From Zancudomyces culisetae HAW-14-8 (Eukaryota > Fungi > Kickxellomycota): a stretch of 64,000 bases of DNA. A model generated the notes under the pieces. That model was given only the letters and a program-made list of their open reading frames with translations. It was not told the DNA's origin and searched no databases. Where the stretch lies: NCBI GenBank assembly GCA_052426225.1, contig JBNJNM010000008.1, positions 992,001 to 1,056,000 of the forward strand. Reading direction: 5' to 3'. A program made the position numbers and the translations under genes. Below, one piece after another: positions 4,459-62,910 of the stretch. The first letter of the stretch is position 1, and each line of letters starts with the position of its first letter.

Positions 4459-4462
4459 GTTG

Positions 4463-4696: not shown

Positions 4697-4700
4697 GTTG

Positions 4701-4954: not shown

Positions 4955-4958
4955 GTTG

Positions 4959-5332: not shown

Positions 5333-5334
5333 GT

Positions 5335-39550: not shown

Positions 39551-39626
39551 TTTGGTTATTTATTTAATAGTTTTTGTGGTTGATTTAGTAGTATTTTAAT
39601 CATTATATTTTTTATATAATTTAATT

Positions 39627-40418
39627 TGTCGTCTCGTATATAAAATAGTAAATTTAATTATATACAAATTGTAACTATTAGCGGCCCGTCTCGTGTAGTG
39701 ATTAGAAGCCAATAACTTTCAATAGGAAGTAAATCATTTTTCTACACGACAAAATAATGTAGTGCGGATTTTATATGAGTCGACAATGTAGTTGATTTCT
39801 ACTTAATAGCATTACAAATTAGTACAACATCAGATTAATACATTTATTCCATATTTAGTTTTTTGTCAAATTATAATTATTTTTTTTACATCGTATTCAA
39901 TTCTTTATTAACTAGAAAAACCTAATGCAAAAAATCTAATACCTAAAAGGTTAATATTAAATGATAATATAAGTCGTTCGAATACACTGTTATATAGTGG
40001 CCAGATCTACCACTAGCCGTTATAAATTAACCTCTAACAACATAATTTACATAAATTTTATTTATTTTTATGTCTATCAATTAATACAGTTTAAAATATA
40101 TTTTAGGTTTATAAATATTTTCAAGTTTGCCTAGTTATTTTTATCCTTCTGGATTTTTTCTACAGCAAATAATTTATTAAAATTATCATTATTTAGCACA
40201 TTATATATTATAAATTGAGTTTATAACAAAATATAAAATAGTATCAAAATAGCTTGAAATAATATGAAATACTATATCAATAAATTTTAGGTCAAAGATA
40301 CAATAGTATCGAGCAATATCATATATAACGTATTGATATTAAGTTAGTTAACAATATACTTGTTATCATTAGAATTAAATATACCAATTATATAGAAAAA
40401 CTAATTTATTCTATAACA
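39627..40418. repeat. Three stacked decayed LTRs (39627..39751 O-like; 39758..39986; 39988..40418 D-like)
   Basis: TG...CA ends, 1-6 bp spacers, motif similarity to O and D in reverse. Confidence 0.65.
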
Positions 40419-40427
40419 CGAAAACTG

Positions 40428-41319
40428 TGTCGCAATATGGGTACTGGGGGTTACACAATTGCTCTGTAACTTTATCCCCATTTGCGCAGAATGGGGTGAC
40501 ACACACCCCTTTGGAGCTGTAGGGGAAAGTCTGATCTCCGACGGACTCCCTAGGCTGCTACTGATCTGTATCTGACGCACTCTAGTGGTCAGATCTTTCA
40601 AGGTCTGGGGACTTAATACCCCAGCATCCTGATCCATGCTGCTGCCAGTACTTCTTCCGGAAGATGATGAAGTGGTACTTATTACCATCACCTCATCTTC
40701 ATACCCAATTGAGTAGTACATTTTCGTAGTTTTGTTATATTTTTTTATTATTAACTAGATGTTTATTTAAAACGTCCGTAATTAAGACATGAATCACGTT
40801 TATAAATTCATCCTATGTCTTTTATTTATATAAACTAACTCATTACATATAATCACTAAACTAACATACATAAAAAAATAATATTACTATATTAATGTTT
40901 GCGTTGAAACGTTGGTGTATGAATGTGTTGTTAACAATCAATCATACATATCCCAACGTTTCTTGGATCAACAATGGAATTGTTCAGCAACGTGTAATCT
41001 GATACAATACACGTAGCTATGCCGTCATACCCGGATCTAGTATCTCGAGACTTTTGTGGCTCTGTTTAAGGGTTTTAGTTTTAATCTCCGTTATTTAATA
41101 TATATAATGTTATCATAGTATGCTTCCCTAAAAATGAGTGTGTAAAAATATATCTCTTGTATTAATTATAAATGAAATAAAAAAGATAAGTAAAGACTTC
41201 ATAAAAACTACGAGTTACCTCGTACAAAAACTTCGATAAATAATTAATCAAAATGGTACATATACTAAATTTTAATAATAATTTAGATGAAACAGAGGCA
41301 AATTTGGCTTAGTGCAATA
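40428..41319 (-). repeat. Solo LTR related to family C, carrying the homologous ORF (40401..40721)
   Basis: MYY...SSMDQDAGVLSPQTLKDLTTRVRQIQI versus MYY...SSMDQETGVLSPRTLGELTESVRQLQI. Confidence 0.8.
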
Positions 41320-41335
41320 ATATCCACTTCTCAAC

Positions 41336-41751
41336 TGTCATATCTAAAATGATGTGTACACCTACCGGCTGGTGATTGGATTGCACCTTGTTACATTTAT
41401 CTATTTATAATTAGTTTTATTATATTAATATGGGTGGAGATTTGAACTTTTTTCCAATGGGGGATTAGATCCAATTTCTAATAGTTGATATCAGTTCGGG
41501 ATATTTAATGGGTGGAGTAGATGATAGTTTTTTAGATAGTCAGATTTTTATAGTTATATATATATAGTTTTAAGAAGAAAAGAAAATACCGTCAGAAATT
41601 ATAATATAGTTTCATAAGTTTCTACATTTAAAGTTATTATATTCTTAGACTGTGTAGCTTAATACTAATTCAGCATCGAGTGTTGTAGGGTGTAGTGACA
41701 CTAATCGCTTAAAGCGATGATAAGTATTTAATTTTAAAATTAAATATTACA
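41336..41751 (+). repeat. Solo LTR family H (A-related)
   Basis: TGTCATAT...AATATTACA ends as in the A LTR; similar length. Confidence 0.75.
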
Positions 41752-41755
41752 ACGA

Positions 41756-42859
41756 TGTTGTATGCTTAGTTCTACCCAAGATAAACTATTGGGTGAACAG
41801 CATACAGCTTCTCAAACACCGATTAACCACCGTTATCTCAGGTGTTCGAGCAAGAAATCTGGGATTTCTTGGGTAATAAATTACCCAAATGTTGGAGAAA
41901 TATTCAGTTTTAATTGTTTTAATTTAAGTTTCTATTATATAAAGTTTTAATATAATAGTTAGTCAGGTACTAGTATAAATCTAGTAACCCCACCACAAGT
42001 TTGGTGGTTAAATCTTTTTATTTTTAAAAGTTATTCATTAAATAAAATACAAATTAGCACTAAAATACTTGATTTTACTCTATAAAATTGAAATTTGTGA
42101 TTTGAGCAAAAACCTATCTATAACAATAAAAAACATAGGTAGTGAAGCGTAACACAATTTCAAAAGGGTATCAGAAAGGTATCAGAGTCTAATTTTTGGA
42201 CCAAAATTAATTGTTTTGCACACCAAATTTTAGGAGTTGGGCGTAATTTTACTGTCATGAACTGATTCTAGCATGTTCGAAAACGTTCTAGTATCATCTG
42301 ATTTTATTCCGCAGTAATGTTTAGAATGTTGGGGAACATTCTAGAACATTACCGAAAATTCACATTATTTATTAATTTTTCTTACGTAATAATTTTCACA
42401 TGTTTAATTTTATTAGCATTCGAGTTTGATTTTTGTTTGATTACTAATCCAATTTGATTAGTAATCAAACACGTTTTTCTTTACATTTCATTTTTAGCTA
42501 TTCCGCAGTTTTCATAGTGATTTTGTTCAAAAACCAAGGCTGGAAAAAAGTATAAAAAGGGTACAATTTTCCTGTCTTGGATTCAGTATCTAGTATCTTG
42601 TATACATTCATACAATAAACTTTAATAATAATAAATATAACTCTCCTGACTCCAGATCTTGACATTTACCCAGTTATATCGCATTTATTGAAATAATAAA
42701 TACATAAAACTATATTTAATATAAGCTAAAAAGGTAGGGTTGACTGGTTAAATAAAGTAAAACTTATTCCAGTAACAATCCCCCTCTATTAGCAGAACTT
42801 TTTGTAGGTTTAGTTGCGGTAATTTCATGAGAAATAATGTGTAATCTAAAATTACAACA
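41756..42859. repeat. Solo LTR family B with nested J-like solo LTR (42253..42664, TSD TTTAC)
   Basis: B alignment resumes after an exact 5-bp TSD. Confidence 0.92.
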
Positions 42860-42861
42860 AG

Positions 42862-45800
42862 TGTAGTATTTTTATTATTTGTATACTAGTGAATATTTAT
42901 TTATTAAGTTTTATTATATATATATAGTAATAAGATATTTAAATAATAGTTCGAAACTTCTTTTGTTAAAAGTAAAGAAAAGTTGAGGTTTATATAGATT
43001 TTCTGTATGTCAACATTGTTTTGAAATCACTAACATGTTCTTCTGTTGTTCAAACATGTTTTATTAATTGATGCGTTGTTTATCTTTTCTACCCCTACAT
43101 TTCTTATCATGTTAACAGTTCACTCAAAACAGCATCGTTACCCCGTGTTAACACACGTGGTTTGGTGTAATTTTTCCGCATGATAAATTACACTGATTTA
43201 TTTTGAAACATATAAATGCGTTAATAAAATTAAATGATATTAATACTAAGAATTAAACAAATGTATGGGGAAAAACCCAGTGGGAAAAAGTGCTCATACA
43301 TTTACTATAAAAACTAATACCACAGACCCCCTCCTAAACTTCGATCGTCCCGATTCGAATAAGGATGGTCTTTATATCTTCTTAATACTGGCTTTAATGT
43401 ACTTGGTGCCACATCTGGAATCATATTTTCTGATTCTCTGTATTTTTTTAGTCTGTCACCATTCACTTGATCCAGGTTATTATCCTCATCTCTAATAATG
43501 TAAGTACCTTTGTCTAGTACTCTAACTATAGTATATGGACCTTCCCATATTGCTGAAAACTTTGAAGTGGGCATTTCCACTTTCTTAAGTACTTTATCTA
43601 GTAACTTGAACTTGAAAACTGTTACTTTCTTATTGTATCTTTGGACTTCATATTCCTTGTTTTTGATTATCTTTTGTGATGCTAGATCTCTTAAACTGGG
43701 AGGTTGACTTCTACAAACTTAAGCCTTTCCTTAAATGCTTCTGTTTCATTTTCATTAGTAACTTCAGAAGTCCACGTAACTGGGGTTCTTATATTGCTCC
43801 CGTAAAGCATTTTGGACGGGGATACACCTAAAATTCGGTGTTTCATTGTGCGAGCAATCAACATTGCTCTCCATAGATATCTGTCCCAATTCTCTTTATC
43901 TTTCCAGCACAACTTAGATAGGACATTTTTTAACGTTTGGTTAAATCTTTCAACTTGGCCGTTGGACTGTGGGCGATAGGACGTAGTAGGATGATGTTCT
44001 ATACCTACAAACTTATAGAACTCATCTGCAATTTCACTTATGAACCCGGACCCTCTATCAGATATCAACTTCCTAGGGACACCGTGATTCATAATAACAT
44101 CATAGACTAAGAAGTGGACTATTGTTTCAGTTTGGATATTTTCTACTGCCTTTGAAATTGGCCATTTAGTATAGTAATCCATGGCTGTTATGATGTAACG
44201 GTTTCCATCCCTCGAAACTGGGGAAATGGGACCGATTGCATCTATACCTAAAATTTCGAATGGCTCTGAGGCTGTAATTGGAACCATTTCGTTTCTTCTC
44301 TTAGGTCCTCCTTTAAATCTTTGGCATACCTCGCAAAAGTTAACTACTTTTTTTACTACCTCAAACGTATTTGGACCGGTGAACATTAACTTGACCTTCT
44401 CCCATGTATTGGAGATACCAGTATGATCATGATTATGCAAATCCTTGATCTTCAGATAAGCATTTTCTTCAGATAATACTTCTCTTAGCCCAAACTTTTT
44501 GCTATGCGCAAATAGTACTCCGTCTTTTAAAATGTACCTTGTGGCGTGTAAACGAATTTTTCTTTTTGCTTCTTCATCGGCTAAATCTGAATATGTGCGA
44601 TCATTCAAGTATTGTTTTAGGGCATTTTGTTTGTTAATTTCCATGCTGAATAATGTTATGCATTCTTCTTCAACCTCTTCCTGCTTGAATTCTTGTTTAT
44701 CATTAGGTGTTGCCCTGGACAGATAGTCAGCAGGATTTAACGTGCCCTTTCTGTGACTTATTTCAAAATCATATTCTTTCAAAATGAGAGCCCATCTAGC
44801 TAGTCTCCCTGTAGCTTGCTTTGAGTGAAATAAATTAATTAAGGCTGAATGATCTGTGACTATTTTAAATCTTTTTCCCCAGACGTAATTCCTGAAGTGA
44901 TTAACAGCCCAGATAACTCCAAGTCCTTCTAGATGTGTTGCAGAGTAGTTTTTTTCTGGTTTGGTAAGTGACCTACTTGCGTACGCTATTGGATGCTCTT
45001 TGCCGCTTTCTGTTTGGCTAAGAATGGCGCCTAGTCCATTTGCAGAGGCATCAGTTGTTATTGTGAAGGTCTTGTCCCATGATGGGTGTCTCAGAATAGG
45101 GGCTTCTTTCAGTAGTGTCTTGAGTTTGTCTACTGCTTGTGTACATTCTTCACTCCAATACCAAGTTACATCTTTTCTCAATAGTTGCGTTAAAGGTCTA
45201 GTAATTGATGCATAATTCTTGACAAACTTTCTGTAATATCCTGTCATACCCAGAAAACTTTGTACTTCCTTAACTGTAGTAGGATAGGAGAGTTTTGCTA
45301 CTGCCTCAGTTTTTTTTGGATTTGTTTCTATCCCTTCACCACTTATGATGTGGCCTAAATACTCAATGCGTTTCTGGGCGAAAACGCATTTAGCATAATT
45401 AAGCTTTATTCTTGCCTTTCTCAATAATTCAAAAACATTATCAAGGTCTTTTAAATGTATATCTAAATTTTCTGAAAAAACAACTATATCGTCATTAAAA
45501 ACAACAACAGATTTCCATAAAACTGAGTCCAATACTTTTTCCATTAGCCTTTGGAATGTTGCGGGGCTATTAGAAAGGCCAAACGGCATTACGTTATAGC
45601 AATAAAGACCTTCTCCTGGAAAAGAGAACGCTGTTTTTAACTTGTTCTTCTCACTGATTCGAACTTGCCAGAATCCTGACATTGCATCTAGTACGCTATA
45701 AACTGATGCACCTGCCAGAGCCTCAAATATATCCTCTATTACCGGAAGGGGATAGTGATCTTTGCGTGTAACTGAATTTAAGCGTCTGTAATCTGAACAG

Positions 45801-48312
45801 ATTCTTATTCCACCGTTTTTTTTCCATACAGTCACGACTGGAGAACACCAGTCTGACTGACAAGGCTCGATTATTCCAGCTTCCTTCATGCGATAGATCT
45901 CCTGTCTGACCATTTCTTTCATTGCATGCGGAACTCGGTATGGCCATGACTTTACGGGTTTGTTGTCATCTGTTACAATTTCGTGCTCTATGACATTAGT
46001 GCTTGTTACTCTGACAGATCTTTTGCTAGGATGTCCTTGTTCTTTGATACTAATTCTCTGATTCTCTGATCCAAAATTTCCTCTTGATTATTGTTTTCCA
46101 CTCTGCATACTTCTTTTGCAATTCCAATAAGCATTTCATTACTAGATTTGCATGCATCTTTATGCATTTCCAACGGTACCACCAGTTGCTCATGATTATA
46201 TGGTAATAACAACTCCAGCGTATTCATATCTATTATAGCTCCATGCTTCTTGAGCCAATCTGTTCCCAGCACTAACGATTCATCCTTTCCTTCCATCAAT
46301 AGCAGATTACAGTTAAACCTTTTGCCCATAATTTTAATAGATACATTGGCGATCATTTTTGATATATGATGATGCTGTCCGTCTGCAGTAAGTATCACCT
46401 CGTTAACTTGTACGTCCGCTTCCAACTTAAGTTTATTTGCCATTTGTCTTGTTACTACGCAGCAGGCGGCTCCAGTGTCAATTACCGCTGTACAGCTGAT
46501 TGTTCCTACTGTTACTAATGCTTTGCAATTTGATGTTTCCTTGTTTTTTACTGTGCTTATATCCCTACTTGTACCAGCATTTTTGAATATTCTGCTAAGC
46601 TCATTTCTTACTATAGGTGCAGCTTTTATCAATTGTGATACTGATATGTTTGCTTTCATGTTATCCAACTCTCTTTGTATAGAATAATCTTGGTTTGGCT
46701 GGTTGGATTTCATTTCCATCATTGATTGTTTAGGTGCTTGTTTTTTTGGTAGTATATTCTTATTATCTACTACTTCTGTCAGTGGTTGGTCAACATTACT
46801 GCTTTTAGGTATGGTCTCTGCATTTAAGTCATCTGTCAGTTTGATGGATTTTAGTTTTTCGGTGCGATCCTGTTCTAATAATCTGCGTTTTTCCACTATG
46901 TTTAATTCCTGCCACATTTTATCCAACACATAAACATCTGATATCTTAACTCCGGTCTCTGATGATGCTGAAGGTGATATCTGCCTGTCTATGAATTGCA
47001 AAGTGTGTGGTTTAATACTTTGCCTTTCGTCATTATTCCTTAAGTTCCAAGGTCCTTTTGGGCACTTAGAACTGTAGTGAGCCTCTTCCTTACAGAAAAA
47101 GCATGCATTTTTCCTTTGTAACTCTGCTTTTTCTTGTTCCGAAAGTCTCATTCTGCTCGGTTTCTTCACCGAATCCGTTTGGTCTAAATGTTCTTTGGTT
47201 GTTTTCATTATGTACTTTTTCATTTCTTTAATTTCATTCATCATTTTCTTCATTTCTTTACCATTTTCTTCATTTTCATTGTCATTAGTAATATTAATTT
47301 TGCATAGTTTGTCCATGTTTTCCTTTTCAGTTGCGACCCTAACTGCTTCATTGTATGTAGTTGCTCTTGATTTATTATTTCTTCTTGAAATTCAGGTCTT
47401 AAGGAACTGATCAGGCATTTGAATTTTATTTCATTGTTGGTTGTATTTGATTTCTCAAATAGTAATTCTATCTTGAACAAGAAATCTTCTAGCTCCACAG
47501 TACTGTTCTGTCTTAATAGCTGAAGCTCTCTCCATGATCTTATGTCTGATTCTACGCTGCTAAACTTCCTTATGAATTCATTCCTTAACTCAGGCCAAGT
47601 ACCTACTCTAAGTCTTTCCCTTTCATACCATTTTAATGCCTTGCCATCCAAAAATAATTCCATATAGTCAATTTGATCTTCTTCAGACCACTGTTCGCTT
47701 CTTCCATACAGTTCATATCTTCTGGTCCATGTGGCAACGTTAATTCTGCTTTCTCCTGTGAATAGTACTGGCTCCATAAGCTTTTTTGCTGCGGTAGAAT
47801 TTCCAATCATTTTCTGCTTTATGTCAGCCTGGTCCTGGCTGGATCACCAAATGTAGTATTATTATTATTTGTATACTAGTGAATATTTATTTATTAAGTT
47901 TTATTATATATATATAGTAATAAGATATTTAAATAATAGTTCGATGCTTCTTTCAAAAAGTGAAGAAAAGTTGGGGTTTATATAGTTTTTCTGTATGTCA
48001 ACATTGTTTTGAAATCACTAACATGTTCTTCTGTTGTTCAAACATGTTTTATTAATTGATGCGTTGTTTATCTTTTCTACCCCTACATTTCTTATCATGT
48101 TAACAGTTCACTCAAAACAGCATCGTTACCCCGTGTTAACACACGTGGTTTGGTGTAATTTATCCGCATGATAAACTACACTGATTTATTTTGAAACTTA
48201 TAAATGCGTTAATAAAATTAAATGATATTAATACTAAGAATTAAACAAATGTATGGGGAAAAACCCAGTGGGAAAAAGTGCCCATACATATACTATAAAA
48301 ACTAATACGACA
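42862..48312 (-). mobile_element. Ty3/Gypsy element F; LTRs 42862..43324 and 47852..48312
   Basis: LTRs of about 460 bp; PBS TGGTGATCCAGCCAGGA (47833..47849, probably tRNA-Arg); polypurine tract AGGAGGGGG. Confidence 0.95.
43314..47810 (-). pseudogene. gag-pol of element F with a frameshift and stops
   Basis: CCHC, IDTGA, RT, RNase H TDAS, integrase, GPY; split over four ORFs. Confidence 0.93.
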
Positions 48313-48316
48313 ATTA

Positions 48317-48568
48317 TGTTGTATGCCTACAATAGGTGAAACATTTCCATTGGTTAATTGAGTTTTGTAATTTTTAGTTAGATTTTTTGGATTAAATTGT
48401 ATAAAATTGAAATTTTTGTTTAACTAAATAAATGTCCTCTTTTGCAAAATCCAAAGTACTGTATAATAATTCGCAGCATATAGTAAAAGGTAAGTAAAAT
48501 GACCCGTCCCGTGTGTTATTTGGTGTAAAAAACACTAAATGGGACGTTAAACATGGTAACACACAACA
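48317..48568. repeat. Solo LTR family G, inverted
   Basis: Reverse complement of 3746..3999. Confidence 0.9.
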
Positions 48569-48572
48569 CGAC

Positions 48573-49014
48573 TGTTATATAGTGGCGTAGATCACCTCTA
48601 ACCACGATATAATCGGCACTCCAATTAGGTTTGTTTATTTTATTATTTATATTATTAATATTGTAGGTCAAAATATATGATCTGAAAGGTTTATAATTAG
48701 TTTATTAAACATTACAAGCTCTAGTTTAATTATTTGATCTTCGGGTTTTTTCTAGATTAGAATAAATATTAAATAGGTTAGAATCGTTATATAGTTTTAT
48801 AGTAGTTTATTAAGTATAGTTAGTATTAAAGTTATAAATACTTGAAATTTTTCAGTAAGTCAATAGATATCAATAAATTCAGTTTTGATCTATTTACTAG
48901 AAGTCTATAACTTATATAATTTTAAACTTGAATAAACATAGTTAAATACATATTTAGTTATCAAAGTAAATAACAGTTTTTAATTAAGCGAAGATAAAGT
49001 ACCAACTCGCTAGA
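48573..49014. repeat. Solo LTR family D, inverted; reconstructed TSD CGAC
   Basis: Reverse complement of 4005..4458; CGAC flanks both sides once E is removed; right terminus imperfect (TAGA). Confidence 0.85.
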
Positions 49015-49634
49015 CGATGTTGTATGCAAAAGCATCAACTTAAATTTACCGCTTTCATTGCAGCAAAATAGCAGAGAAATCAATTTTGAAAAAATTGTTT
49101 CCTGCGCAACTCAATTTAGAGTACAAAAATTATGACCATGTCATAAATTTTTGTCAATTTTACAGCCAATTTAATAGTACAAATCGATTTATTTTTTAAT
49201 CGAATCGATTTTATACTTTATTAGTGGATTTATTTTTAATCAATTTTATTAGTAAATTATTAGTATAAATTGAAAAATTTGTAAATCCGACCAAAACCAC
49301 ACTAAAAGTAAAAATAAACATATATAGAGAGGCGTAATACTATTTTTTAGTGTAAGGAAAGGGCCATTTTGGCTATATTTTCCAGGTTTTGGGAGGAATT
49401 CTTTTAAATAAAATTATTTTTACCAAAAATTGTGGAAATTGTCCAGTTGTGTTCTTTCCGAGGGGGTTTTATAGATAGTGGTTAACTGGCTAGAAATGGT
49501 AAATCCTGTGTCAGTAATAACCACCCTTCTAGGGAATCGTGATTGATATTAGTGGAAGTTTTTTTGGGAAAATCCTATTGGACTAGTACTAAAAAATGAA
49601 AACGAATTCAACAAATGGGGGCTCTGCCGGGAAT

Positions 49635-52090
49635 GGTATGAGGAGAAATTGGAAGAAAAGTTAAATTTTTGGTCAGAAAGATTTTCTTTCTAATGACCAA
49701 AAATTTGCCGTAAAAGCTTCGGCTATGTCGCCTAGAAGCCATTTATGAGACGAGTTGGACCTTACACCATCTGGGGCCAATGTGGGCTAGTAGGAGGTTT
49801 GTTCCTTTTAAATAGGGAATAAATTCTCTGAACCACCGGACCAGGTAAGGTAACCACGAAAGCCCTTTTAGGGACTCGCGCTGGTAAATGCGAAACACTT
49901 TCAGTGGGGCTAGGAACATTGGCTTTAAATACATTTTTCCCTTTAAGATTTTTCTCGATACTTTTTCGGGTTTCATTTACATTTTAGCCTAAATGTAATT
50001 GAATTTCCCACATTACCCGACCTTTTCTTTTTAGGCTTTTGGGGAATTTAACAAATTGGGACTTGGGATATTAATTAAGTTTAATAGAACATTTCCAAAC
50101 AGATAAATTCAACAAATGTCTTTGGGAACTTTTCCCAGAACAGCTTAAAATGCTGTGTTACCTCGGGAGTTGAAGCAAAATGTGCGTTATGTCGCATACT
50201 TTTGGATACTTCCCAGGTGTTGGTGGTAAATGTTTATGGGTTTTTAGGCCGATAAGCATATTTTTGGTTGGAAGCGGAAACGAGACGGGTTCGTCTGGAT
50301 TCCCCAAATATTGAAATCTCCTAGATACGGTGATAGCTAAAGAAAGTTAATTTTCGTTAATGCTAGCTGTACGGAGACCTTCCAATACTTGGGAGAAGAA
50401 AGATGGATACTGGGGGTTTACTGCTGAAAAGCAAAATTATGTGTAAGTAACCTAAAAATACATGTACACAAGTCACCAAAGGTGGGCTCAAAACAGAAAT
50501 GAGACGGACTTCTTTGAGAAGTACTGGGGATTTCTGCGGCGGGTTTTACACCATATCACCGGCGTCTAGGGACTAAATGCAATGCCATTTAGTCTTAGTA
50601 GAAGCCACTAGTAGTAATGAGGATAATGGGATGTAAAAATCCTAATTTTTTCTTACTACACCGAGTCTAGGAGCCCGACCATAGGTTACTAGACCGGCAA
50701 CTTTGTAGCTAACTTTAAGAATAACATCCTTAAAGTGGAGAAAAGCTACCAGTGACAGTGGGAAGGTAAGAGTTAACCAACCTACTAAAGTCACTTGGTA
50801 AGTTTAAGCGAGCTATATGCAAGCTTATTCTAGGCCACAGTTTTGCTGGGAAACTACCTGGAGTTGAACTCCAGTAGTAAAAGTGTAAGAAGTTTAAAGG
50901 TAGAAATAAACTTCACACTTTAAATAGGGAGATCCTGTATCTATCTCCAGATACACTCCCAAGTTTTGAGAAGTTGAAGTTAGTTATCCAAATCCTTTTT
51001 CAAGATTTAGGGAAACTGAATCAGACTTCCTGGGTGGTTTTAAAGGAATAATTTTTTCTTTAATTGGTTTTAAGTAAGGAAATAACTGGGGAAATAATTT
51101 CTACCCTACCAGTTAACCCAGAAACTATACGAGTAATAAAATACTCGATTCCAAAACCGAATGAATGAAACAGGTGGAGGAATTTTGTGGTAAAGTTCCG
51201 TAAAATATGGAACTAAATTGGTATTAGGTTTGGTAGTAGTATTTAAACAAGATCAGCCTAATATTATCGGGAAACTAAAAAGTTTACCCAGTAAGTCAGT
51301 AAATGGTAGTACCCAAAAAAGGGACACCTTGGGTTCGGTAGAACAAACGGAAGTATTCCAAACCCTCCAACCTACGTGGTAAGAGTACTTTCAGTTCTGG
51401 GGACCTTTCTACACCTTAAGTAGCTAACAAGGTGAGATAAATATTTACGAGGTGATAACCCTGCAGGAATCAACCTACGTCATTAATGGGACAGGAGCAG
51501 AACTGGTTTACTCTCTTTGTCCGGCCTAACCATTCTACCAAATTAAGGATAGATAAGTTAGATGGGGGTCTTAGTATAACCAATTACGGAGTAGCCAAAG
51601 CACTCCAAAAGTGAAGGATACCATGGAGGTCAATTCCTAGGTATTCTACAGTCAATTGGGTGATGTAAGTTCAACATTCCCAAGGGGCTAGGGAGAGGTA
51701 GAAATTAAAATTTATTTCAACCAAACCCAATAGTGGTAACAAAGTAAGATGCACAATATTGTCGTCTTATGAGTTCTGTTAGAGCGGCGCGTCTTCAGAA
51801 CGGTAAATATCATTTAACTAGTTTCTACTTTCTAGTTGATATTATTCGGAACCGAAACATACTGAAAAGATTAAATTCAATAATCTTTTATTACACTAGA
51901 TTAAATCCCTCCAACGTTCGAAAGATCTAGTGTGGAAATATGAAATGGGGGTAAAACAAATCCGATGTCCAATCTTTTGGGCGGGGAGGTCCTCCCTTCC
52001 AAACCGTTCGGGAGTTGGGTAAAACATCAAACCCAAACTGTTCATCACTTCAAAACTGACTGAACTTTTGGTAACTTAAATTGGGAATTA
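49635..52090 (+). ncRNA. Putative large structured RNA region in the leader of element E
   Basis: No long ORF; near-continuous inverted repeats with G-U-compatible pairs; family not recognised. Confidence 0.5.
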
Positions 52091-52511
52091 AATTTATGAA
52101 TACAAGTCAGAATAACATAGCAGATAAAAAGCAGGGACACAGTCCAAATTAAAACAAAGTAAAACTAATCAAAACCAGCAAAGAGATACAAAAATTTAAA
52201 TTAATTGAGTCGAAATACTAAAAATCAAATCAGACTCCAAATCAAACAAAATCGAAATTTAATCCTATAAATCTAAAAGTTTATCCAACTTTCAACGGAT
52301 TAACAAGTTTTCTAAACAATACTAAACTACAACAATAAATAATACAAAAAAAAAAAAAAAAAAAATTATTATAATAAAATAATATATAATAAAAATATTG
52401 TTAAAAAATTAAACATAAAAACATAAAAATATAAAAATATAAAATTTATAAAATTACAAAATAAAAAAAAAAAAAATTATCAATTATTTAAAGTTTAACA
52501 ACAAAATCAAA

Positions 52512-55500
52512 ATGTTTAGTAAAAGAGCAGAAAAGTTGAGAGAGGATACTACTGATGATGAATCAGAGGAGGTCGAAGTACAGGAGACGAGCGTTCCTGA
52601 ACCAACAACTGACCGAATACCTCTAAATATGAACTTTACGTTCAACAGAGGAATTCCAGATGTAGCAATGTTCGATAGCAACACTACTACAAACGTGGAA
52701 GAATGGCTCGATAGGTATGAGCTAATGGCTAGGATCAACAGCTGGATGGAAAAAGACAAGATTGATTTCTTAGAATTGTTTTTAACGGGGAAAGACCTTC
52801 GATGGTACAAGATCAATAAGTCTAAACTAGAAAAATGGAAAAAGGTTCGTGAGGAATTCCTGGAAAAGTTTGAAGGTAAAGACAGAGAGGCACGAGCGTG
52901 GAATCAACTGCAAAGCCTTAAACAAAGTGACTACCTCGACTTTGAAGATTTTGAGACGGAGTTCAGCAAACTGGTCTCAACAGTCGATATTAAAGACGAA
53001 CGGATCAGACTTAAGTTTTTTGTAGACGCTCTTAACCCCAAGTATCAAAGGCAAATTTTAAAAGCCAAAGTTAAGGATGTCAAATCTGCCATAGCAATAA
53101 TCCAGGCAGAAGAGGATGTCGAGAAAATATTACCTACTGTCAGGGAAACATCAGAAAAACCAAAAAGCACTAGTAGGAAGGTGATGAAGGTACATAAATC
53201 TAATGAGGGACCAGATATGTACGAGGCGTTGATTAAAAAGTTTGACGAGCTTTCACTTAATCTTCTAGCTAGATTAGAAAAGAGACCCAATTACTCTGAA
53301 AAGTCTGCTCCACAACCAAGAAGACCGTTCAAGAAAGTGGAATGTACATACTGCAAAAGGCCAGGGCATGAGGCCGCAGCGTGCTACAAGAGGCAGAAGG
53401 ACCAAAAACAAGAAATTAACTGCATAGAGATAGAAAGAAAAACAGATGGAAACAAAGATACGGAACTCTATGCAGTGGACAAACGGAAGAGAGACGAAAA
53501 CAATGGCATGGATTTTCAGCCAGCTCATGCAAAAATCCGTGTGGCACAAAAAGAACCTAACAAAACGGGGCCAGTAATCAAACCAGCTACCCTAAGAGTT
53601 AGGAAGAAAATGGATATTAGACTATCGGAGAACATTCAAAAGTTTTCGATAGGTTCAGAGTTGGATAAATTAAAACCAGATATTTCACTTGGTCAACTGT
53701 TACAGTCTTCACCCGAAATCAGGAAAGAGTTGGTCGATCTCTTTAAGAAGATAGAAGCCAAGGAGCTGAACACCATTGTAGAAGATAGGACAACCACCAC
53801 AAACTGCAAAGCTTACATTGAAGTATTTGGAAAGCACCAGCTCACAGTTATTGATACAGGTGCAGCATGTTCAGTAATCTCAGAGCAATTTATGGACATG
53901 TTAGGTTTAAAAATTGAGCAAAAAGATCACTCAATGCTCATAACCGCTGATGGCACCAAGCATGAGACACTGGGAATAATCAGAGATGTTCCATTTGTTA
54001 TAGCAGGGTTCATTTTCCCAGGAGATTTAGTAGTTATGGAAGGAGGATTAAACCGGATGGTGTTGGGAGCAGATTGGTTACTGAAACACCAGGCCAACAT
54101 CGATTTGAGCAACATGGAGCTGCTCTTACCAACGGTAGAAGGGGACGTTGTAGTTTCACTGATGATAACTGAAACAGATGGTCCAAAACAGACAAACGAG
54201 TATGAATACTACTCGATGATCAAGGAAGTCGATAACCGCGAACAGAAAGAAAAACTACCAGAAAATATTGCAGAAGTGCTCAAAGAGTATGCAGAGATAT
54301 TCGTGGATGACTTGCTAGAACTCCAGCAAACAAATGTGTTGGAACACAGTATTGATACTGGAGATTCAAACCCAGTAAGAGTGCGACCATACAGAATAGC
54401 TCACCACCTAAGGGAACAGGTGAGGGAAGAACTAAAAATTATGGAACAAAGAGGGATCATAGAGCCATGTCAATCAGACTGGTGTGCACCGGTAGTTGTA
54501 GTCAAAAAGAAAAACGGAAAACTTCGGATCTGTTCTGACTACCGCAAACTCAACATGATTACCAGAAAAGATCTTTATCCTCTACCCATAATTGACGACA
54601 TACTGGCAGCATTCGGAGAAGCAGGAGTATTCAGTGTAGTCGATGCCATGAGTGGATTCTGGCAGGTACGTATGAACAGCGCGGATAAACACAAGACCTC
54701 GTTTGCATTACCAGGTGATGGTATGTATTGCTATAATGTAATGCCGTTTGGATTATGCAATAGTCCGGCAACATTCCAAAAGATGATGGAACGAGTACTG
54801 CAAAAGTACTCTGGAAGTTTGCTATTGTGTTTGTAGATGACATAATCATCTATTCAAAGAACACAGAAGACCACACTCAACATCTTAGAGAAGTGTTTGA
54901 GTTATTGAAGCAACACAAGGTGCAACTCCACAAAGAAAAATGTGAGTTTGCAAAGACCGAAATCAAGTATCTGGGATATACGGTCTCTAAACATGGCATT
55001 TCTACCAACAAGGATAAAATAGAGGCCATGGAAAAAGTAACCGCACCAAGGAACGTCAAAGAGATTCAATCGTTCTTGGGGCTCACAGGTTACTACAGAA
55101 AATTTATAGAGGGATACGCATTGATAGTAAAGCCGCTTACAGAGCTATTAAAGAAGGACGTACCCTGGACTTGGAGCGCAAGTTGTGAAGAGTCGGTTAA
55201 AACACTAATTAAAAAACTAACAGAAGCACCGACTCTGGCACACCCAAATTGGGAACAGGCATTTATACTCACAACGGATGCATCTGGAATTGGATTGGGG
55301 GCAATTCTATCTCAAGTACAAAATGGGGAAGAAAGACCCATAGCATATGCCAGTAGAACAAACAACAGGCATGAACAGAACTACTCAATCACACACTTGG
55401 AAGGATTGGCAGTAGTTTGGGGAGTCAAAAAGTTTAAGCACTACCTGTATGGAAAGAGGTTCAAGATTCGAACCGACCATATGGCATTGTTAAAAGTTTT

Positions 55501-56953
55501 TGATTCTCAAGAGTTAAATGGAAGAGTCGCTAGATGGGCCATGTTCCTAAGAGAGTACGACTTTGAATTGGAGCATTGCCGCGGTCCAAATAATCCTACT
55601 GATTATTTATCCAGGAACGTAGAGACCGGAGAAAAGGAAAACAAGATAACAAAGTATGAGGAACTAATGGTAATCGATGTCTTACATCATAAAGCCATTG
55701 AGAACTACCTCAGAGATTTCAGCTACCCGCTACGAGCTGATGAGGAGTTCAGAGCCAAGCTAAGAAAAAGAGCAAAGCCGTATAAACTAGTAAACGGTAA
55801 AGTATGCAAGTACTCTAGGGAATCAGGAATCCGAGAAGTGTTACACAGCGACAATGCTAAGTTAATGATAAGAGAAATTCATGAAGAAGGACACGAAGGG
55901 ATTCTAAACACTCTCAATAGAGTGAAAAATAAATATGTAGGAAGAGGCTTGCGTAAAATTGTAGAAGAAGTGGTACAAGAATGCGAACGGTGCCAAAAAT
56001 ATGAAGAAGGCGAATTTAGAAGAACGGAAATGCATCCGATAATTGCGCCTGCACCATTCCAAATCATGGGTATAGATGTAGTAGGACCCATTAACCCTAT
56101 ATCAAAATCTGGGAATAGATTTATCATCACAGCGATAGACTATTTTACTAGGTGGCCCATTGCGGTACCAGTAACAAATTTCCAGTCAGAAACCATCGTA
56201 GAATTTCTATTAAGTAAGGTAGTACAGGAGTTTGGAGTACCAACTCAGTTAATTTCAGACAGAGGCAGTTCATTTGTATCAGAAATAACTACGGAGTTAT
56301 ACAAGCAGTTGGGAATAAAACACACACCAACTACTGCTTTCAGGCCTCAGACTAACGGACAAGTCGAGAGATTTCATAGAACATTTAAGAATGTCTTAGC
56401 AAAAATATGCGTAATGGACAGAGACAACTGGGATAGTTATATTTGGAAAGCCCTACTGGTTGTTAGATCAATGAAAAACAGATCTACTGGGTTCAGTCCA
56501 TCAGAGATGTTATATGGTGTAAAAATGCAAACACCATCAACTTGGATGCCGCCGGCTGAAATTGATAACTTAGAGGAAGAAATATTGCAGAGAATGAGAG
56601 TCGTGCAGATCAGTATTCCAAAGATGAGAGAAAAAGCTATGGAAAATAACGCAAATTCAAAGTCAGTAATGAAGCAGAGATACGACAAAGTGGTAAAGCG
56701 TTATCAGTTCAAAGAAGGAGACCTAGTATTAAAAAGAATAAGTGGACCTGGAGGCAAGTTTGACCCAATCTGGGAAGGTCCTTACGAAATCATCAAGTGT
56801 TACACAAAAGGCGTGTATTTGATCAAAGACCCAGACGGAAACATGGATACAGTGAACGGCGATAGATTAAAGGCCTACAAGTATTCAGAAAGAATGGTCC
56901 CCGAAGTAGTTCCAAGTTCTTTAAGAACTAAAATCAGAAGATACAGGAATTAA
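52512..56953 (+). CDS. gag-pol polyprotein of element E with one frameshift near 54800
   Basis: CTYCKRPGHEAAAC, IDTGA, MPFGL, FVDD, TDAS, integrase, GPY; adding one A in CAAAAG joins the two ORFs. Confidence 0.93.
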
Positions 56954-57586
56954 TCACGGAGCGAAAGCTGGAGGGGGGACATTGTTGTATGCAAAAGCAT
57001 CAACTTAAATTTACCGCTTTCATTGCAGCAAAATAGCAGAGAAATCAATTTTGAAAAAATTGTTTCCTGCGCAACTCAATTTAGAGTACAAAAATTATGA
57101 CCATGTCATAAATTTTTGTCAATTTTACAGCCAATTTAATAGTACTAATCGATTTATTTTTTAATCGAATCGATTTTATACTTTATTAGTGGATTTATTT
57201 TTAATCAATTTTATTAGTAAATTATTAGTATAAATTGAAAAATTTGTAAATCCGACCAAAACCACACTAAAAGTAAAAATAAACATATATAGAGAGGCGT
57301 AATACTATTTTTTAGTGTAAGGAAAGGGCCATTTTGGCTATATTTTCCAGGTTTTGGGAGGAATTCTATTAAATAAAATTATTTTTACCAAAAATTGTGG
57401 AAATTGTCCAGTTGTGTTCTTTCCGAGGGGGTTTTATAGATAGTGGTTAACTGGCTAGAAATGGTAAATCCTGTGTCAGTAATAACCACCCTTCTAGGGA
57501 ACCGTGATTGATATTAGTGGAAGTTTTTTTGGGAAAATCCTATTGGACTAGTACTAAAAAATGAAAACGAACTCAACAACGACACA

Positions 57587-57668
57587 GTCACTTTGGCGGA
57601 GTGGTTAACGCGGTGGCCTGCTAAGCCATTTCCCTCTGGGAGCGCAGGTTCGAATCCTGCAGGTGACG
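57587..57668 (+). tRNA. tRNA-Ser (GCT)
   Basis: Acceptor GTCACTT/AGGTGAC+G, anticodon loop CTGCTAA, long variable arm, T loop TTCGAAT. Confidence 0.96.
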
Positions 57669-57670
57669 TT

Positions 57671-57743
57671 AGAGCTATGGTGTAGTGGCTATCACGTCTG
57701 CTTTACACGCAGAAGGTCTTGGGTTCGATCCCCAATAGCTCTA
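57671..57743 (+). tRNA. tRNA-Val (TAC)
   Basis: Acceptor AGAGCTA/TAGCTCT+A, anticodon arm TCTGC-TTTACAC-GCAGA, T arm TTGGG-TTCGATC-CCCAA. Confidence 0.96.
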
Positions 57744-57758
57744 TTTTGACAATCTTTT
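57744..57758 (+). terminator. Probable Pol III terminator (two T4 runs)
   Basis: TTTT directly after tRNA-Val and a second TTTT just downstream. Confidence 0.55.
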
Positions 57759-58323
57759 ATCCTGTTTAGTATAACGGCTACATATTTTTTGCTAGCGAAT
57801 CAACTGCGATACCTTAGCATAATATAACTACCAATTAACTTGTAGTTATTTTATATCTAAATATTTATAACAGTAAAGTTGATTATCTGAACGATCAGGG
57901 AATAAAAGCGAAGCGGACAAGGAAAATAAACATCTTTAGCATTTCTTAGCGGAATATACTTTACATATACGTTTTTATATACTTAATAATTGAAATTAAC
58001 ACTACATTGAGATAGTTTACTTAGTGTTTTATTATTATTACAACAATAATAAAAGTTATTAAAAACATTCATATTACGGCAAACAGAACTAGTTAAGTGA
58101 TCCGAGACCTGAGTATAACTGACACAATCAGTGCTATACCAAACTCAGCCATCACATTAGCTGAAAAATATATCAGATAACTTATAACATCTACAATATA
58201 TTACAATTGGGGGCTCTGCCGGGAATTTAATCTCCATATATCTCAGTTGAGGGAGAATTGAATGTTTATTTACAAAAAGATTCAATTACAGTAGTACAAC
58301 AACGTCAAAGTATACAGATTCAA

Positions 58324-61300: not shown

Positions 61301-62720
61301 TAAGAGTTTATTAAACCTGTTTAATGGAAAAGAACTTACTGGGAGAGTAGCCAGATGGGCCATGCTACTCAGAAACTATGATTACGAGATACAGCACTTG
61401 CCGAGCAAAAAGAACCCAGCAGACAGCTTGTCAAGACTCTCAATGGAAACGGCGACAGACGAGGAGGAAGATGATGCAGAATATGTCGATCTAAATTGCT
61501 TAGAGATAGGTGAATATAATAGAATAATAGATAATTTAATGACTTCAGATAATTTACTTGAAAACCAGGACGAATCTAGATCAGCCAGCGATGCTCACAG
61601 CGGGAAAAGATACATTCTCAAAGACGGTGAATTATATATAAAAATCGGAAATACTGAAAAGCAGGTATTAAATACTGATAACGCAAGCGAAGAGATATGT
61701 AAAGTGCATTTTGAGACGCACGAAGGCGTAGAAAACACTTTCAAACGAATCAAGCAAAGGTTTTATGGGAAGAATTTATTTAAAATTTCACAAGGAGTAG
61801 TACGAAGCTGCGAAGTTTGCCAACTATTTAAAGGGAACAAGAGTAGAAAAAATTACCTTAATACGGTAGAGGGAAACCGCCCATTCGAGATATGGGGAAT
61901 CGACGCCATGGGTCCAATTAACCCAGTATCGAAGAGCGGAAATCGATATATTCTGACTGCCATCGACTACTGCACCAAATGGCCAGTAGCTTTACCGGTT
62001 CCTAACCTACTTAGTAGTACAATAATTAATTTCATTATATACAAAATAGTTATGGACTATGGAGTCCCGACCCAATTAATTACAGATCAAGGTTCAAGTT
62101 TCATGTCCGAAGCAACCAAGGCAGTATACAAGTGGTTGGGCATAAAACATGCACCCACCTCAGGCTACCGACCCCAGAGCAACGGACAGGTCGAACGCTT
62201 GAATAGATCTATAAAGTCAATAATGGCTAAACAAATAGATGAGGACTACCTTAACTGGGATACCTACCTTTGGAAGACACTGCTAATACTGAGGACCCTT
62301 AGCAGTAAGACGACTGGATTTACACCGGCGGAACTACTATACGGAAAGGATCTAACTATGGCACACAACTGGACTCCCACGAACCTAATCGACAGAAGAA
62401 ACGAGTTAGTGCACCACAGAATAGAGTTCCTTAGCACCGGGCTTAAGCAAATTCGAGAACTAGGTTTGGATAATTCGAAAGTTAAAAAATTGAAACAAAA
62501 TGGATACTACGATATAAAAGTTAAAGAAAAATTATTTAGGAAAAACGACATCGTTTTGAAATTCATCGAAGGCGAAAAAACGAAATTTCAAAGAATTTGG
62601 AAAGGACCGTACAAAGTCGAAAAATTTTTGATAAACGGAACATACGTAATTGTCAGTAGCGAAGGAAATAGCGAACTAGTCAATGGCGACACTTTAAAAT
62701 TATTTCACGAATCAAACTAA
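58324..62720 (+). pseudogene. gag-pol of element M (frameshift near 59745, TAA at 60138..60140)
   Basis: CYHCGRKGHRRYEC, LDTGA, FVDD, TDAS, integrase, GPY. Confidence 0.93.
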
Positions 62721-62779
62721 CCAATTAATTAATTATTTACTTGAAATGTTCCTAAATTGATAAGAAAAAAATTAATAAT

Positions 62780-62910
62780 AATAATCGAATTGATAAAAAT
62801 CAGAAAACACGAAACGACATGATAAAAATCAGAAAAGACAATAAATCGAATTGAAAAAAAAAAAAATCAGAAAAGACAAAAAATCGAATTGATAAAAATC
62901 AGAAAATTTA
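62780..62910 (+). repeat. Imperfect tandem repeat in the 3' UTR of M
   Basis: AATCGAATTGATAAAAATCAGAAAA-like units about 4 times. Confidence 0.75.

What the first reader, a model, noticed from the sequence alone, without database searches (positions are those of the whole stretch)
39627..57668. Multi-family retrotransposon stack ending 8 bp upstream of a tRNA gene: a time-ordered insertion archive
Seen: ten LTR units sit end to end, mostly 1-9 bp apart (one gap is 16 bp). The last, E, has near-identical LTRs and TSD ACGA at -8..-5 from the mature tRNA-Ser 5' end. Removing E shows D with TSD CGAC at -7..-4. Deeper junctions reuse the same words (ACGA 41752, CAAC 41332, ACAC 39984), and decay increases away from the tRNA. 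Known: yeast Ty3 and Dictyostelium DGLT-A integrate just upstream of Pol III genes. Inference: many distinct families with different PBSs share one Pol III-defined site, and each insertion pushes older ones outward, giving a polarised record loosely like CRISPR spacer acquisition. Some TSDs (F, G, B) no longer match, implying later recombination.
Basis: partly seen in the sequence, partly recalled or inferred. Interest (0 to 1): 0.92.

Follow-up and report, generated by a model that had tools for sequence, protein, structure and literature searches.

The report
tRNA-targeted retrotransposon pile-up in fungus
In this gut fungus of mosquito larvae (Zancudomyces culisetae), a dozen or more related Ty3/gypsy retrotransposon families all insert about 8 bases in front of tRNA genes. 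Repeated hits build layered stacks with the newest element next to the tRNA; the mechanism is known from yeasts, but it is new for this fungal group and unusually pervasive.

Summary
Window 39.6-57.6 kb is a head-to-tail pile of about 11 LTR units, plus one nested unit, with 2-9 nt junctions. It ends in a full-length Ty3/gypsy element, E (LTRs 99.3 % identical, TSD ACGA), 8 nt before a tRNA-Ser/tRNA-Val tandem.

The genome is Zancudomyces culisetae (Harpellales). In 19 of 20 sampled tRNA loci a repeat ends 3-16 nt (mode 8) upstream of the mature tRNA. There are 11 tRNA-adjacent full-length elements with LTRs 98.5-100 % identical, 10 with intact 4-bp TSDs, and 15 of 16 orientable proximal units point the same way as the tRNA. 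At least 12 LTR families with at least 6 primer-binding sites form one Harpellales clade.

This is Ty3/Tj1-type Pol III-directed integration. That kind is known; this is a new member in a new phylum.

The "time-ordered archive" reading is only partly supported. Proximal elements are younger (p = 0.02), and best-copy identity falls with depth (rho = -0.7). However, deeper units mostly lack TSDs, one is reversed, one is a nested insertion from a non-targeting lineage, and a four-unit block recurs elsewhere with different flanks.

5S and U6 genes show no insertions. A sub-lineage nested in the clade (H) sits downstream of tRNAs instead. Another first-reader note (s1-647214) reported a similar stack elsewhere in this genome.

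The parts
57587..57668 (+). tRNA-Ser(GCT), the target gene; first member of a tandem pair with a 1-nt spacer
   Evidence: ARAGORN. Eight copies in the genome.
57670..57744 (+). tRNA-Val(TAC), second member of the tandem pair
   Evidence: ARAGORN.
49018..57578 (+). Element E: full-length Ty3/gypsy, 8.56 kb, the youngest layer. It has a 2.8-kb ORF-free leader, and the reading frame is split within RT in this copy.
   Evidence: LTRs 99.33 % identical. TSD ACGA, PBS and PPT. gag-PR-RT / RT-RH-IN by Pfam. At least 40 LTR copies in the genome.
57579..57586 (+). 8-nt interval ACGACACA between the E LTR and the tRNA; the first 4 nt are E's right-hand TSD
48573..49014 (+). D2: solo LTR of a Ser-like-PBS family, probable TSD CGAC
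   Evidence: Best other copies are 93 % identical. Full-length relatives on C10 and C21 have TSDs.
48317..48568 (+). D1: 252-bp solo LTR (TGTTGTATGCC...ACACAACA), abundant family, no matching TSD here
   Evidence: Up to 98 % identical to other copies. It is also the tRNA-proximal unit in L017.
42862..48312 (-). Element C: full-length Ty3/gypsy in reverse orientation, PBS complementary to the tRNA-Arg(ACG) 3' end, flanks AG / ATTA (no TSD)
   Evidence: LTRs 96.2 % identical. Pfam. PBS match. 98.8 % identical internal copy in L020.
41756..42859 (+). F11: solo LTR (about 690 bp, sister family of E) split by the F4 insertion; left flank ACGA
   Evidence: 94-96 % identical to other copies.
42253..42664 (+). 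F4: solo LTR nested inside F11, TSD TTTAC, from a distant gypsy lineage that is not tRNA-site specific
   Evidence: 96.8 % identical to the L004 LTR; 28 % RH-IN identity to E. Absent from the C6 copy of the block.
41336..41751 (+). G: solo LTR (TGTCATATC...ATATTACA), flanks CAAC / ACGA
   Evidence: An independent copy is 77 % identical.
41055..41333 (+). A ~280-bp TG...CA unit; part of the block shared with C6
40428..41050 (+). 620-bp solo LTR, many copies at 93-94 %; its tip is mutated (..TCTCGAGA versus ..TCTCGACA)
39627..40418 (+). The three oldest recognisable units: 39627-39751, 39758-39983, and an F10-like LTR at 39988-40418
   Evidence: Only 78-85 % identical to any other copy.
57766..63611 (+). 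Element H: full-length Ty3/gypsy starting 22 nt downstream of tRNA-Val, same PBS as E. It belongs to a lineage found downstream of tRNAs, not to the upstream stack.
   Evidence: LTRs 93.9 % identical. Pfam. H-like LTRs lie 14-250 bp downstream of tRNAs in 16 of 20 loci and never upstream.

Best explanation
The stack is the product of repeated, site-directed integration by a diversified clade of Ty3/gypsy (Metaviridae) LTR retrotransposons of Zancudomyces culisetae.

Their integrase makes a 4-bp staggered cut about 5-8 nt upstream of the mature 5' end of tRNA genes. This is about where Pol III starts. Integration is almost always in the orientation that puts the 3' LTR next to the tRNA.

Because the tRNA and its internal promoter survive each hit, the site is reused. 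Every new element lands between the previous LTR and the tRNA and pushes older layers outward. LTR-LTR recombination then reduces most older elements to solo LTRs.

Shown here: the site, the TSDs, the orientation bias, the multi-family use of the site, and the youth of the proximal layer.

Inferred by analogy with Ty3 and Tj1: that the integrase is tethered by the Pol III pre-initiation complex (TFIIIB and/or TFIIIC).

The stack is a coarse stratigraphy rather than an exact archive. Ectopic exchange of blocks, occasional reverse insertions and nested hits from non-targeting lineages blur the deeper layers.
For: Position of the insertion site:
- In 19 of 20 tRNA loci taken in contig order, a repeat ends at -3..-16, mode -8/-9. 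This is 18 of 19 if the 99.6 % duplicate pair L006/L012 is counted once. Only L015 is TE-free.
- Eleven tRNA-adjacent full-length elements leave 3-9 nt (mode 8) between the LTR tip and the tRNA. Their LTRs are 98.5-100 % identical, and 10 of the 11 have perfect 4-bp TSDs. Two second-layer elements also have perfect TSDs.
- Exact-pattern hits for the E LTR tip followed by a tRNA A box occur at 5 places, with gaps of 7-8 nt and 0 hits in the reversed-pattern control.

Orientation:
- 15 of 16 proximal units that can be oriented point the same way as the tRNA (binomial p = 5e-4).

Family diversity and relatedness:
- There are at least 12 LTR families that do not align with each other. Their PBSs match tRNA-Arg(ACG), tRNA-Thr(AGT) and Pro- and Ser-like tRNAs.
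- The families share 48-65 % RH-IN identity and form one clade with Smittium culicis sequences.

The site is measured from the tRNA body:
- In L005 an element with identical LTRs sits inside the 6-nt spacer of a tRNA-Thr/tRNA-Thr dimer, at -9..-6 of the second tRNA, with TSD CACT.

Polarity:
- LTR identity of full-length elements is higher in the proximal layer than in deeper layers (Mann-Whitney p = 0.02).
- 14 of 19 proximal units are full length, whereas deeper layers hold at least 25 solo LTRs against about 6 full-length elements.
- In this stack, best-copy identity falls with depth (Spearman rho = -0.7, p = 0.036).

Coding content and nearest solved relative:
- The domain order is gag-PR-RT-RH-IN.
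- The best PDB match is the Ty3 Gag-Pol of the Ty3-TFIIIB intasome, 7Q5B (E = 1e-66).
Against: - No TE lies within 1.5 kb of the six 5S genes found or the single U6 gene, so generality across Pol III genes is untested.
- The transcription start sites of these tRNAs are unknown.
- No binding or mobilisation data exist.
- The polyproteins end at about Ty3 residue 1468, so they lack the beta-barrel of the Ty3 chromodomain that contacts Brf1 (PMC8632968). The tether may differ.
- Only 5 of at least 40 E LTR copies abut a tRNA directly. This fits displacement by later insertions, but I could not check it.
- Deeper layers lack TSDs, and a block is shared with C6.
Confidence: 0.85

Rival explanations
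1. Integration is not targeted. Insertions land anywhere, and only those just upstream of tRNA genes survive purifying selection in a fairly compact 27-Mb genome.
For: tRNA-upstream DNA is a classic 'safe haven'. The whole window is TE-derived with no host gene, so tolerance of TEs here is evident.
Against: - Selection cannot give a 4-bp site precise to a few nucleotides at 19 of 20 loci.
- Nor can it give a 15:1 orientation bias in elements whose LTRs are 100 % identical, i.e. too young for much filtering.
- Lineages in the same TE islands that are not tRNA-specific (F4, N776) insert inside other LTRs.
Confidence: 0.05
2. The elements target each other: LTR ends, TE islands or heterochromatin. 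The tRNA is incidental, so the stack is ordinary TE nesting.
For: - Junctions are LTR tip to LTR tip.
- The same families recur as neighbours in many loci.
- LTR-LTR adjacency also occurs at 18.8-20.4 kb, far from any tRNA.
Against: - The proximal element always abuts a tRNA, not another LTR, on its 3' side.
- In L001 and L005 a young element has no older LTR beside it: L005's left neighbour is a tRNA.
- No chromodomain is detected.
- LTR-LTR adjacency far from a tRNA is what an old displaced stack looks like.
Confidence: 0.05
3. The stack was largely assembled by segmental duplication and ectopic recombination between stacks. Its order therefore does not record local insertion times.
For: - C6:963494-965495 carries 40428-42859 (minus F4) at 95 %, with different flanks on both sides and no tRNA-Ser nearby.
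- G+F11 also recurs on C23 at 89 %.
- Beyond E and D2, no unit in the stack except the nested F4 has matching TSDs.
- L006/L012 and two C11 sites are large duplicates.
Against: - The two proximal layers have TSDs.
- The LTR divergences 0.7 % (E) and 3.8 % (C), and the 5 % divergence of the shared block, are in the order that sequential insertion predicts.
- Across loci, proximal elements are the youngest.
- This rival modifies the main explanation for the deep layers rather than replacing it.
Confidence: 0.3
4. Targeting is real but is not Ty3-like TFIIIB tethering. The integrase may read TFIIIC on the A/B boxes, Pol III itself (as Ty1 does through AC40), or a nucleosome-free gap.
For: - There is no Ty3-type chromodomain barrel.
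- The fixed orientation resembles Tj1 and the Ty3 TFIIIC-mutant phenotype (PMC4600332).
- 5S and U6 genes are unoccupied, which would fit dependence on a tRNA-type (A/B box, TFIIIC) promoter.
- One insertion lies upstream of the second tRNA of a dimer.
Against: - Single-nucleotide-scale precision next to the presumed start site is the hallmark of TFIIIB-positioned Ty3 and Tj1. Ty1-type Pol III tethering gives a ~1-kb periodic window (PMC5911963).
- 5S genes sit in tandem arrays with a 13.2-kb period that are probably homogenised (established knowledge, not tested here), and there is only one U6 gene.
Confidence: 0.3

Closest known systems
Tj1 of Schizosaccharomyces japonicus (Ty3/gypsy; PMC4600332)
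   Same: - Inserts within about 12 bp upstream of tRNA genes.
- Inserts in one orientation, the same as Pol III transcription. That paper calls this unique; here the ratio is 15:1.
- The host carries about 10 gypsy families clustered with tRNA genes.
   Different: - Tj1 is self-primed, whereas these elements have tRNA-type PBSs (Arg, Thr, Pro-like, Ser-like).
- In S. japonicus the tRNA genes and TEs are centromeric. Here occupied tRNA genes are spread along the contigs.
- Only Tj1 was shown to target. Here at least 12 families show the footprint.
- Different phylum (Ascomycota versus Zoopagomycota).
- Tj1 also hit a 5S gene. No such case was seen here.
Ty3 of Saccharomyces cerevisiae (PMC8632968, PMC5911963)
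   Same: - Metaviridae with gag-PR-RT-RH-IN.
- Integrates within a few bp of the tRNA start site and leaves the gene intact.
- Best PDB match of E's Pol (E = 1e-66). The alignment runs through the integrase SH3-like CTD that contacts TBP.
   Different: - Ty3 inserts in both orientations and makes 5-bp TSDs (my recollection, not checked here). Here the TSD is 4 bp.
- The Ty3 integrase carries a vestigial chromodomain (IN residues 446-511) that binds Brf1. These polyproteins stop at about its first residues and end in a short conserved basic tail.
- RH-IN identity to Ty3 was not computed.
Beta/Tca8 (Candida albicans), Tyl3/Ylt1 (Yarrowia lipolytica), Ty3p (PMC5911963, Table 1)
   Same: Ty3/gypsy elements found 5-30 bp upstream of tRNA genes in fungi.
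   Different: All are in Ascomycota. They have one or two families per genome and no reported saturation of tRNA genes or fixed orientation. They were not compared by sequence here.
DGLT-A and Skipper-2 of dictyostelid amoebae (PMC5006619)
   Same: - DGLT-A is a gypsy element 10-34 bp upstream of tRNAs, with several sub-families per genome.
- Skipper-2 is a gypsy element 7-136 bp downstream of tRNAs. This matches lineage H here (14-250 bp downstream, either orientation).
   Different: - DGLT-A inserts in either orientation and further from the gene.
- Skipper-2 carries a (group II) chromodomain and belongs to a different clade from DGLT-A. Here H has no detectable chromodomain and is nested inside the upstream-targeting clade.

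Membership tests
Ty3/gypsy LTR retrotransposons (Metaviridae) | LTRs with TG...CA termini, PBS after the 5' LTR, polypurine tract before the 3' LTR, short TSD | tested here: met
   18 full-length elements examined. 12 of the 13 proximal or second-layer elements have a 4-bp TSD.
Ty3/gypsy LTR retrotransposons (Metaviridae) | Domain order gag-PR-RT-RNase H-IN (integrase after RT) | tested here: met
   Pfam: RVP_2, RVT_1, RT_RNaseH, Integrase_H2C2 and rve in that order. Several proximal copies have one uninterrupted ORF of 1432-1513 aa.
Pol III-gene-targeting retrotransposons (Ty3/Tj1 type) | Insertions concentrated within ~15 bp upstream of tRNA genes | tested here: met
   19 of 20 loci, mode -8. 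Gaps of 3-9 nt for 11 young elements.
Pol III-gene-targeting retrotransposons (Ty3/Tj1 type) | Insertions also at other Pol III genes (5S, U6) | tested here: not met
   Six 5S genes (five in arrays with a 13.2-kb period) and one U6 gene have no similarity to any TE-bearing locus within 1.5 kb. This is a weak test: the arrays may be homogenised and there is only one U6 gene.
Pol III-gene-targeting retrotransposons (Ty3/Tj1 type) | Integrase tethered by TFIIIB (Brf1/TBP) | not testable with these tools
No complex job was run.
Ty3 proper | Vestigial chromodomain C-terminal to the integrase CTD (IN residues 446-511; PMC8632968) | tested here: not met
   The alignment to 7Q5B ends at Ty3 polyprotein residue 1465, 3 residues before E's stop. 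Nine families end 25-45 residues after the SH3-like barrel. The AF2 model shows one barrel plus a low-confidence short helix.
Tj1-like | Fixed orientation, same as the Pol III gene | tested here: met
   15 of 16 proximal units; L004 is reversed.
Tj1-like | Self-priming instead of a tRNA primer | tested here: not met
   The PBSs begin with TGG. Two are exact complements of the tRNA-Arg(ACG) and tRNA-Thr(AGT) 3' ends plus CCA.
Chromoviruses | Chromodomain (PF00385) at the integrase C-terminus | tested here: not met
   No chromo hit in any of the 10 proteins scanned.

The most novel reading that the evidence does not exclude
Within a single fungal clade of integrases, the target moved from a fixed-orientation site 8 nt upstream of tRNAs to a loose window 14-250 nt downstream (lineage H, nested inside the upstream clade).

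The upstream families share a short basic C-terminal tail (consensus ..MIPEVt..L+sKL+RFK) that the one H copy seen lacks. This tail could be a small, swappable tether to the Pol III machinery.

In addition, almost every tRNA gene now has an LTR tip at -9. The LTR ends may therefore have become the working upstream context (TFIIIB seat and start site) of the host's tRNA genes.
Probability: 0.2. Interest if true: 0.75.

Novelty: new member of a known kind. Interest (0 to 1): 0.55.

Why it matters
Pol III-directed integration is the textbook case of a retroelement choosing a safe site. It has been studied almost only in ascomycete yeasts and Dictyostelium.

Here it appears in an early-diverging fungus (Harpellales, Zoopagomycota), and several features stand out:
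- nearly all sampled tRNA genes are occupied;
- a dozen or more co-resident families compete for one 4-bp site;
- there is a Tj1-like fixed orientation;
- many elements have identical LTRs and uninterrupted ORFs, so activity is likely ongoing;
- a sister lineage sits on the other side of the gene.

This offers natural replicates for asking what part of an integrase sets position and orientation, and how tRNA genes tolerate having their whole upstream region replaced.

The stacks give a usable but imperfect relative chronology of family activity. They are also evident substrates for ectopic recombination.

Tried and rejected
1. Fetching all 55 tRNA loci. The survey therefore rests on 20 tRNA loci plus 12 D-family loci. 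I did not use pattern searches to read further flanks.

2. Read evidence for empty or polymorphic alleles.
- No run held more than 21 % of the words.
The tRNA-Val was left out of the PBS script and the later genome query stopped at 57668.

3. L023 as a duplicate of C-LTR|D1|D2. Rejected: the middle unit is a different 225-bp LTR and the junctions differ.

4. The C6 block as a duplicated tRNA-Ser locus. Rejected: no tRNA-Ser is near it, and the flanks differ on both sides.

5. The 32.5-38.6 kb element as an old member of the stack lineage. Rejected: its Pol is only 30 % identical and groups with F4.

6. A conserved TATA-like box at a fixed distance in LTR 3' ends. None is convincing in this AT-rich DNA.

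7. The junction words ACGA/CAAC/ACAC as leader relics. This is ambiguous, because LTR tips themselves end in ..CGACA or ..CAACA.

8. Structure of the integrase C-terminus. The mean pLDDT was 60. Only the SH3-like barrel is confident, so no fold search was run.

9. Complex prediction was not used because no host partner sequence was available.
Full report
**What is there**

The window is G000:C8:992001-1056000 of a 27.1-Mb, 25-contig assembly. A polyprotein from one of its elements is 100 % identical to an NCBI protein of Zancudomyces culisetae, and the next relatives are from Smittium culicis. The organism is therefore this Harpellales gut fungus of mosquito larvae.

ARAGORN finds two tRNA genes 1 nt apart: tRNA-Ser(GCT) at 57587-57668 and tRNA-Val(TAC) at 57670-57744.

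A third pair lies downstream of the tRNAs, 57766-58206 / 63170-63611 (93.9 %). The ORFs between the LTRs carry gag, aspartic protease, RT, RNase H and integrase in the Ty3/gypsy order.

**Check of the observation**

E ends 8 nt before the tRNA, and ACGA flanks both ends, as stated.

CGAC lies left of D2. After E is removed, CGAC lies right of D2 at -7..-4. This needs a D2 tip of ..GCTAGA, whereas other copies end in ..GCTAACA.

Reading the sequence together with genome-wide copy boundaries gives 11 units with junctions of 2-9 nt, plus one solo LTR (F4, 42253-42664, TSD TTTAC) nested inside another (F11).

Apart from the nested F4, only E and D2 have TSDs. D1, C, F11, G, the 280-bp unit, the 620-bp LTR and the older units do not. 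C lies on the minus strand.

LTR units and degraded RT fragments continue upstream. The left end of the window holds a second stack facing the other way. The start at 39627 is therefore arbitrary.

**Genome-wide test**

Infernal scored 63 tRNA genes in 55 loci.

- In 19 of the 20, repeated DNA ends 3-16 nt before the first tRNA, mostly at -8/-9. L006 and L012 are a 99.6 % duplicate pair, so the count is 18 of 19 independent loci. L015 (tRNA-Met) is TE-free.
- Eleven loci, counting the window, carry a full-length element whose 3' LTR abuts the tRNA. LTR identity is 98.5-100 %, the gap is 3-9 nt (mode 8), and 10 of the 11 have a perfect 4-bp TSD. Two second-layer elements also have TSDs.
- Several of these copies have a single uninterrupted 1432-1513-aa ORF.
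- Of 16 proximal units that can be oriented from a PBS or PPT, 15 point the same way as the tRNA. L004 is reversed.
- The LTRs fall into at least 12 families that do not align with each other.
- Their PBSs are complementary to tRNA-Arg(ACG) (exact), tRNA-Thr(AGT) (exact), Pro-like, Ser-like and at least two unidentified tRNAs.
- An exact pattern of the E LTR tip, a spacer and a tRNA A box matches 5 places (gaps 7-8 nt) and 0 in the control.

The six 5S genes found (five in arrays with a 13.2-kb period, presumably rDNA units) and the one U6 gene have no TE within 1.5 kb.

**Relationships**

In RH-IN, the upstream families are 48-65 % identical to E. They form one clade with S. culicis sequences (support 93/95).

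F4, the 32.5-38.6-kb element and the 776-bp-LTR element are distant (28-33 %). Where their insertion sites can be read, they lie inside other LTRs rather than at tRNAs.

Lineage H (the downstream element of the window) is nested within the upstream clade (100/99). H-like LTRs lie 14-250 bp after the tRNA 3' end, in either orientation, in 16 of 20 loci. None was seen in the 166 kb of sampled upstream DNA. Several have 4-bp TSDs.

**Mechanism**

The position, the 4-bp TSD and the survival of the tRNA match Ty3 and Tj1. Ty3's integrase is positioned by TFIIIB through its CTD and a vestigial chromodomain (PMC8632968). Tj1 inserts within 12 bp of tRNAs in a single orientation (PMC4600332).

E's Pol matches the Ty3 polyprotein of 7Q5B best (E = 1e-66), through the SH3-like CTD. 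However, the polyproteins here stop at the start of the Ty3 chromodomain. They end in a conserved basic tail that the H copy lacks. An AF2 model is confident only for the barrel.

Tethering to the Pol III pre-initiation complex is therefore inferred, and the partner is open.

A natural experiment supports measurement from the tRNA body. In L005 an element with identical LTRs sits inside the 6-nt spacer of a tRNA-Thr(AGT)/tRNA-Thr(TGT) dimer, at -9..-6 of the second gene.

**Is it a time-ordered archive?**

In favour:
- Proximal full-length elements are younger than deeper ones (medians 100 % versus 99.0 % LTR identity, Mann-Whitney p = 0.02).
- 14 of 19 proximal units are full length, while deeper layers hold at least 25 solo LTRs and about 6 full-length elements (Fisher p = 1e-5 on approximate counts). 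The 8.3-kb fetch window biases this comparison.
- In this stack, E (0.7 % LTR divergence) lies before C (3.8 %). Best-copy identity falls outward (rho = -0.7, p = 0.036).

Against exactness:
- TSDs are missing in the deep layers.
- C is reversed.
- F4 is nested.
- The four-unit block 40428-42859 also sits at C6:963494-965495 (95 %, without F4), with different neighbours on both sides and no tRNA-Ser nearby. G+F11 also sits on C23 (89 %).
- The order of families differs between loci.

Ectopic exchange between stacks is the likely cause. Such exchange is known for Ty/tRNA regions in yeast (PMC5911963).

**Novelty**

tRNA-upstream gypsy elements are listed for Saccharomyces, Candida, Yarrowia, S. 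japonicus and dictyostelids (PMC5911963, PMC5006619). Full-text searches found nothing on this subject for Zancudomyces or Harpellales.

This is a new member of a known kind. It stands out for the near-saturation of tRNA genes, the number of families, the fixed orientation and the nested downstream-targeting lineage.

Another first-reader note in this genome (s1-647214) describes a similar three-element stack at a tRNA-Pro gene. It agrees with this report, but I did not examine that locus.

**Limits**

- The sample is 20 tRNA loci.
- No read or expression data were obtained.
The tree used only uninterrupted ORF segments.

Noticed in passing
window 57766-63611; L002-L020 downstream flanks: A Ty3/gypsy lineage (H; LTR TGTAGTATAAC...ATTACA, same PBS as E) lies 14-250 bp downstream of tRNA genes, in either orientation, in 16 of 20 loci and never upstream. 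Some loci hold small downstream stacks (L014 has three). It is nested within the upstream-targeting clade. This is the behaviour described for Skipper-2 of dictyostelids.
   Followed up: partly
window 57587-57744; L002, L008, L010, L013, L014, L016, L020: Many tRNA genes are head-to-tail pairs 1-7 nt apart (Ser-Val, Ala-Lys, Thr-Thr). They are presumably dimeric transcription units.
   Followed up: no
L005 (oriented) 2901-8373 = G000:C6:844981-854852: An element with 100 % identical LTRs is inserted in the 6-nt spacer of a tRNA-Thr(AGT)/tRNA-Thr(TGT) pair (TSD CACT, which includes the last 2 nt of the first tRNA). It splits the dimer.
   Followed up: yes
window 49614-52511 and 54827-54836: E carries a 2.8-kb leader without any ORF of 70 aa or more on its own strand. 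The leader ends in an A-rich low-complexity tract (52335-52477). It is shared by the E copy in L017. In the window copy the reading frame is split inside the RT domain.
   Followed up: partly
window 5747-17626: A full-length element of a distant lineage (776-bp LTRs, 99.6 % identical, 5-bp TSD CTCAC, no TGG-type PBS) is nested in the right LTR of element X. X-like elements are themselves tRNA-proximal in L006/L012.
   Followed up: partly
window 1-4954: A second stack faces leftwards (F11-family element running off the window, then D1, D2, D1, all reversed). This implies a minus-strand tRNA just beyond the window start.
   Followed up: no
L009 (oriented) 1736-8297: Three identical 762-bp LTRs are separated by two 2.1-kb internal regions (LTR-int-LTR-int-LTR). 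This is a tandem of a short, probably non-autonomous element abutting tRNA-Thr at -3. Its TSD ACTG includes tRNA position +1.
   Followed up: no
G000:C11:1960868-1960908(-) and C11:2033480-2033520(+): Identical E-LTR/tRNA junctions, and matching D2 copies, lie 72 kb apart in inverted orientation. This indicates a large inverted duplication.
   Followed up: no
window 39049-39294: A 25-bp tandem repeat (7 or more copies) lies inside a decayed 776-like LTR (38849-39551).
   Followed up: no
G000:C1 and C4 (L033-L037), C22 (L038), C21 (L039): 5S rRNA genes recur every ~13.2 kb (probably rDNA-linked). There is a single U6 gene. Neither type has a TE within 1.5 kb.
   Followed up: yes
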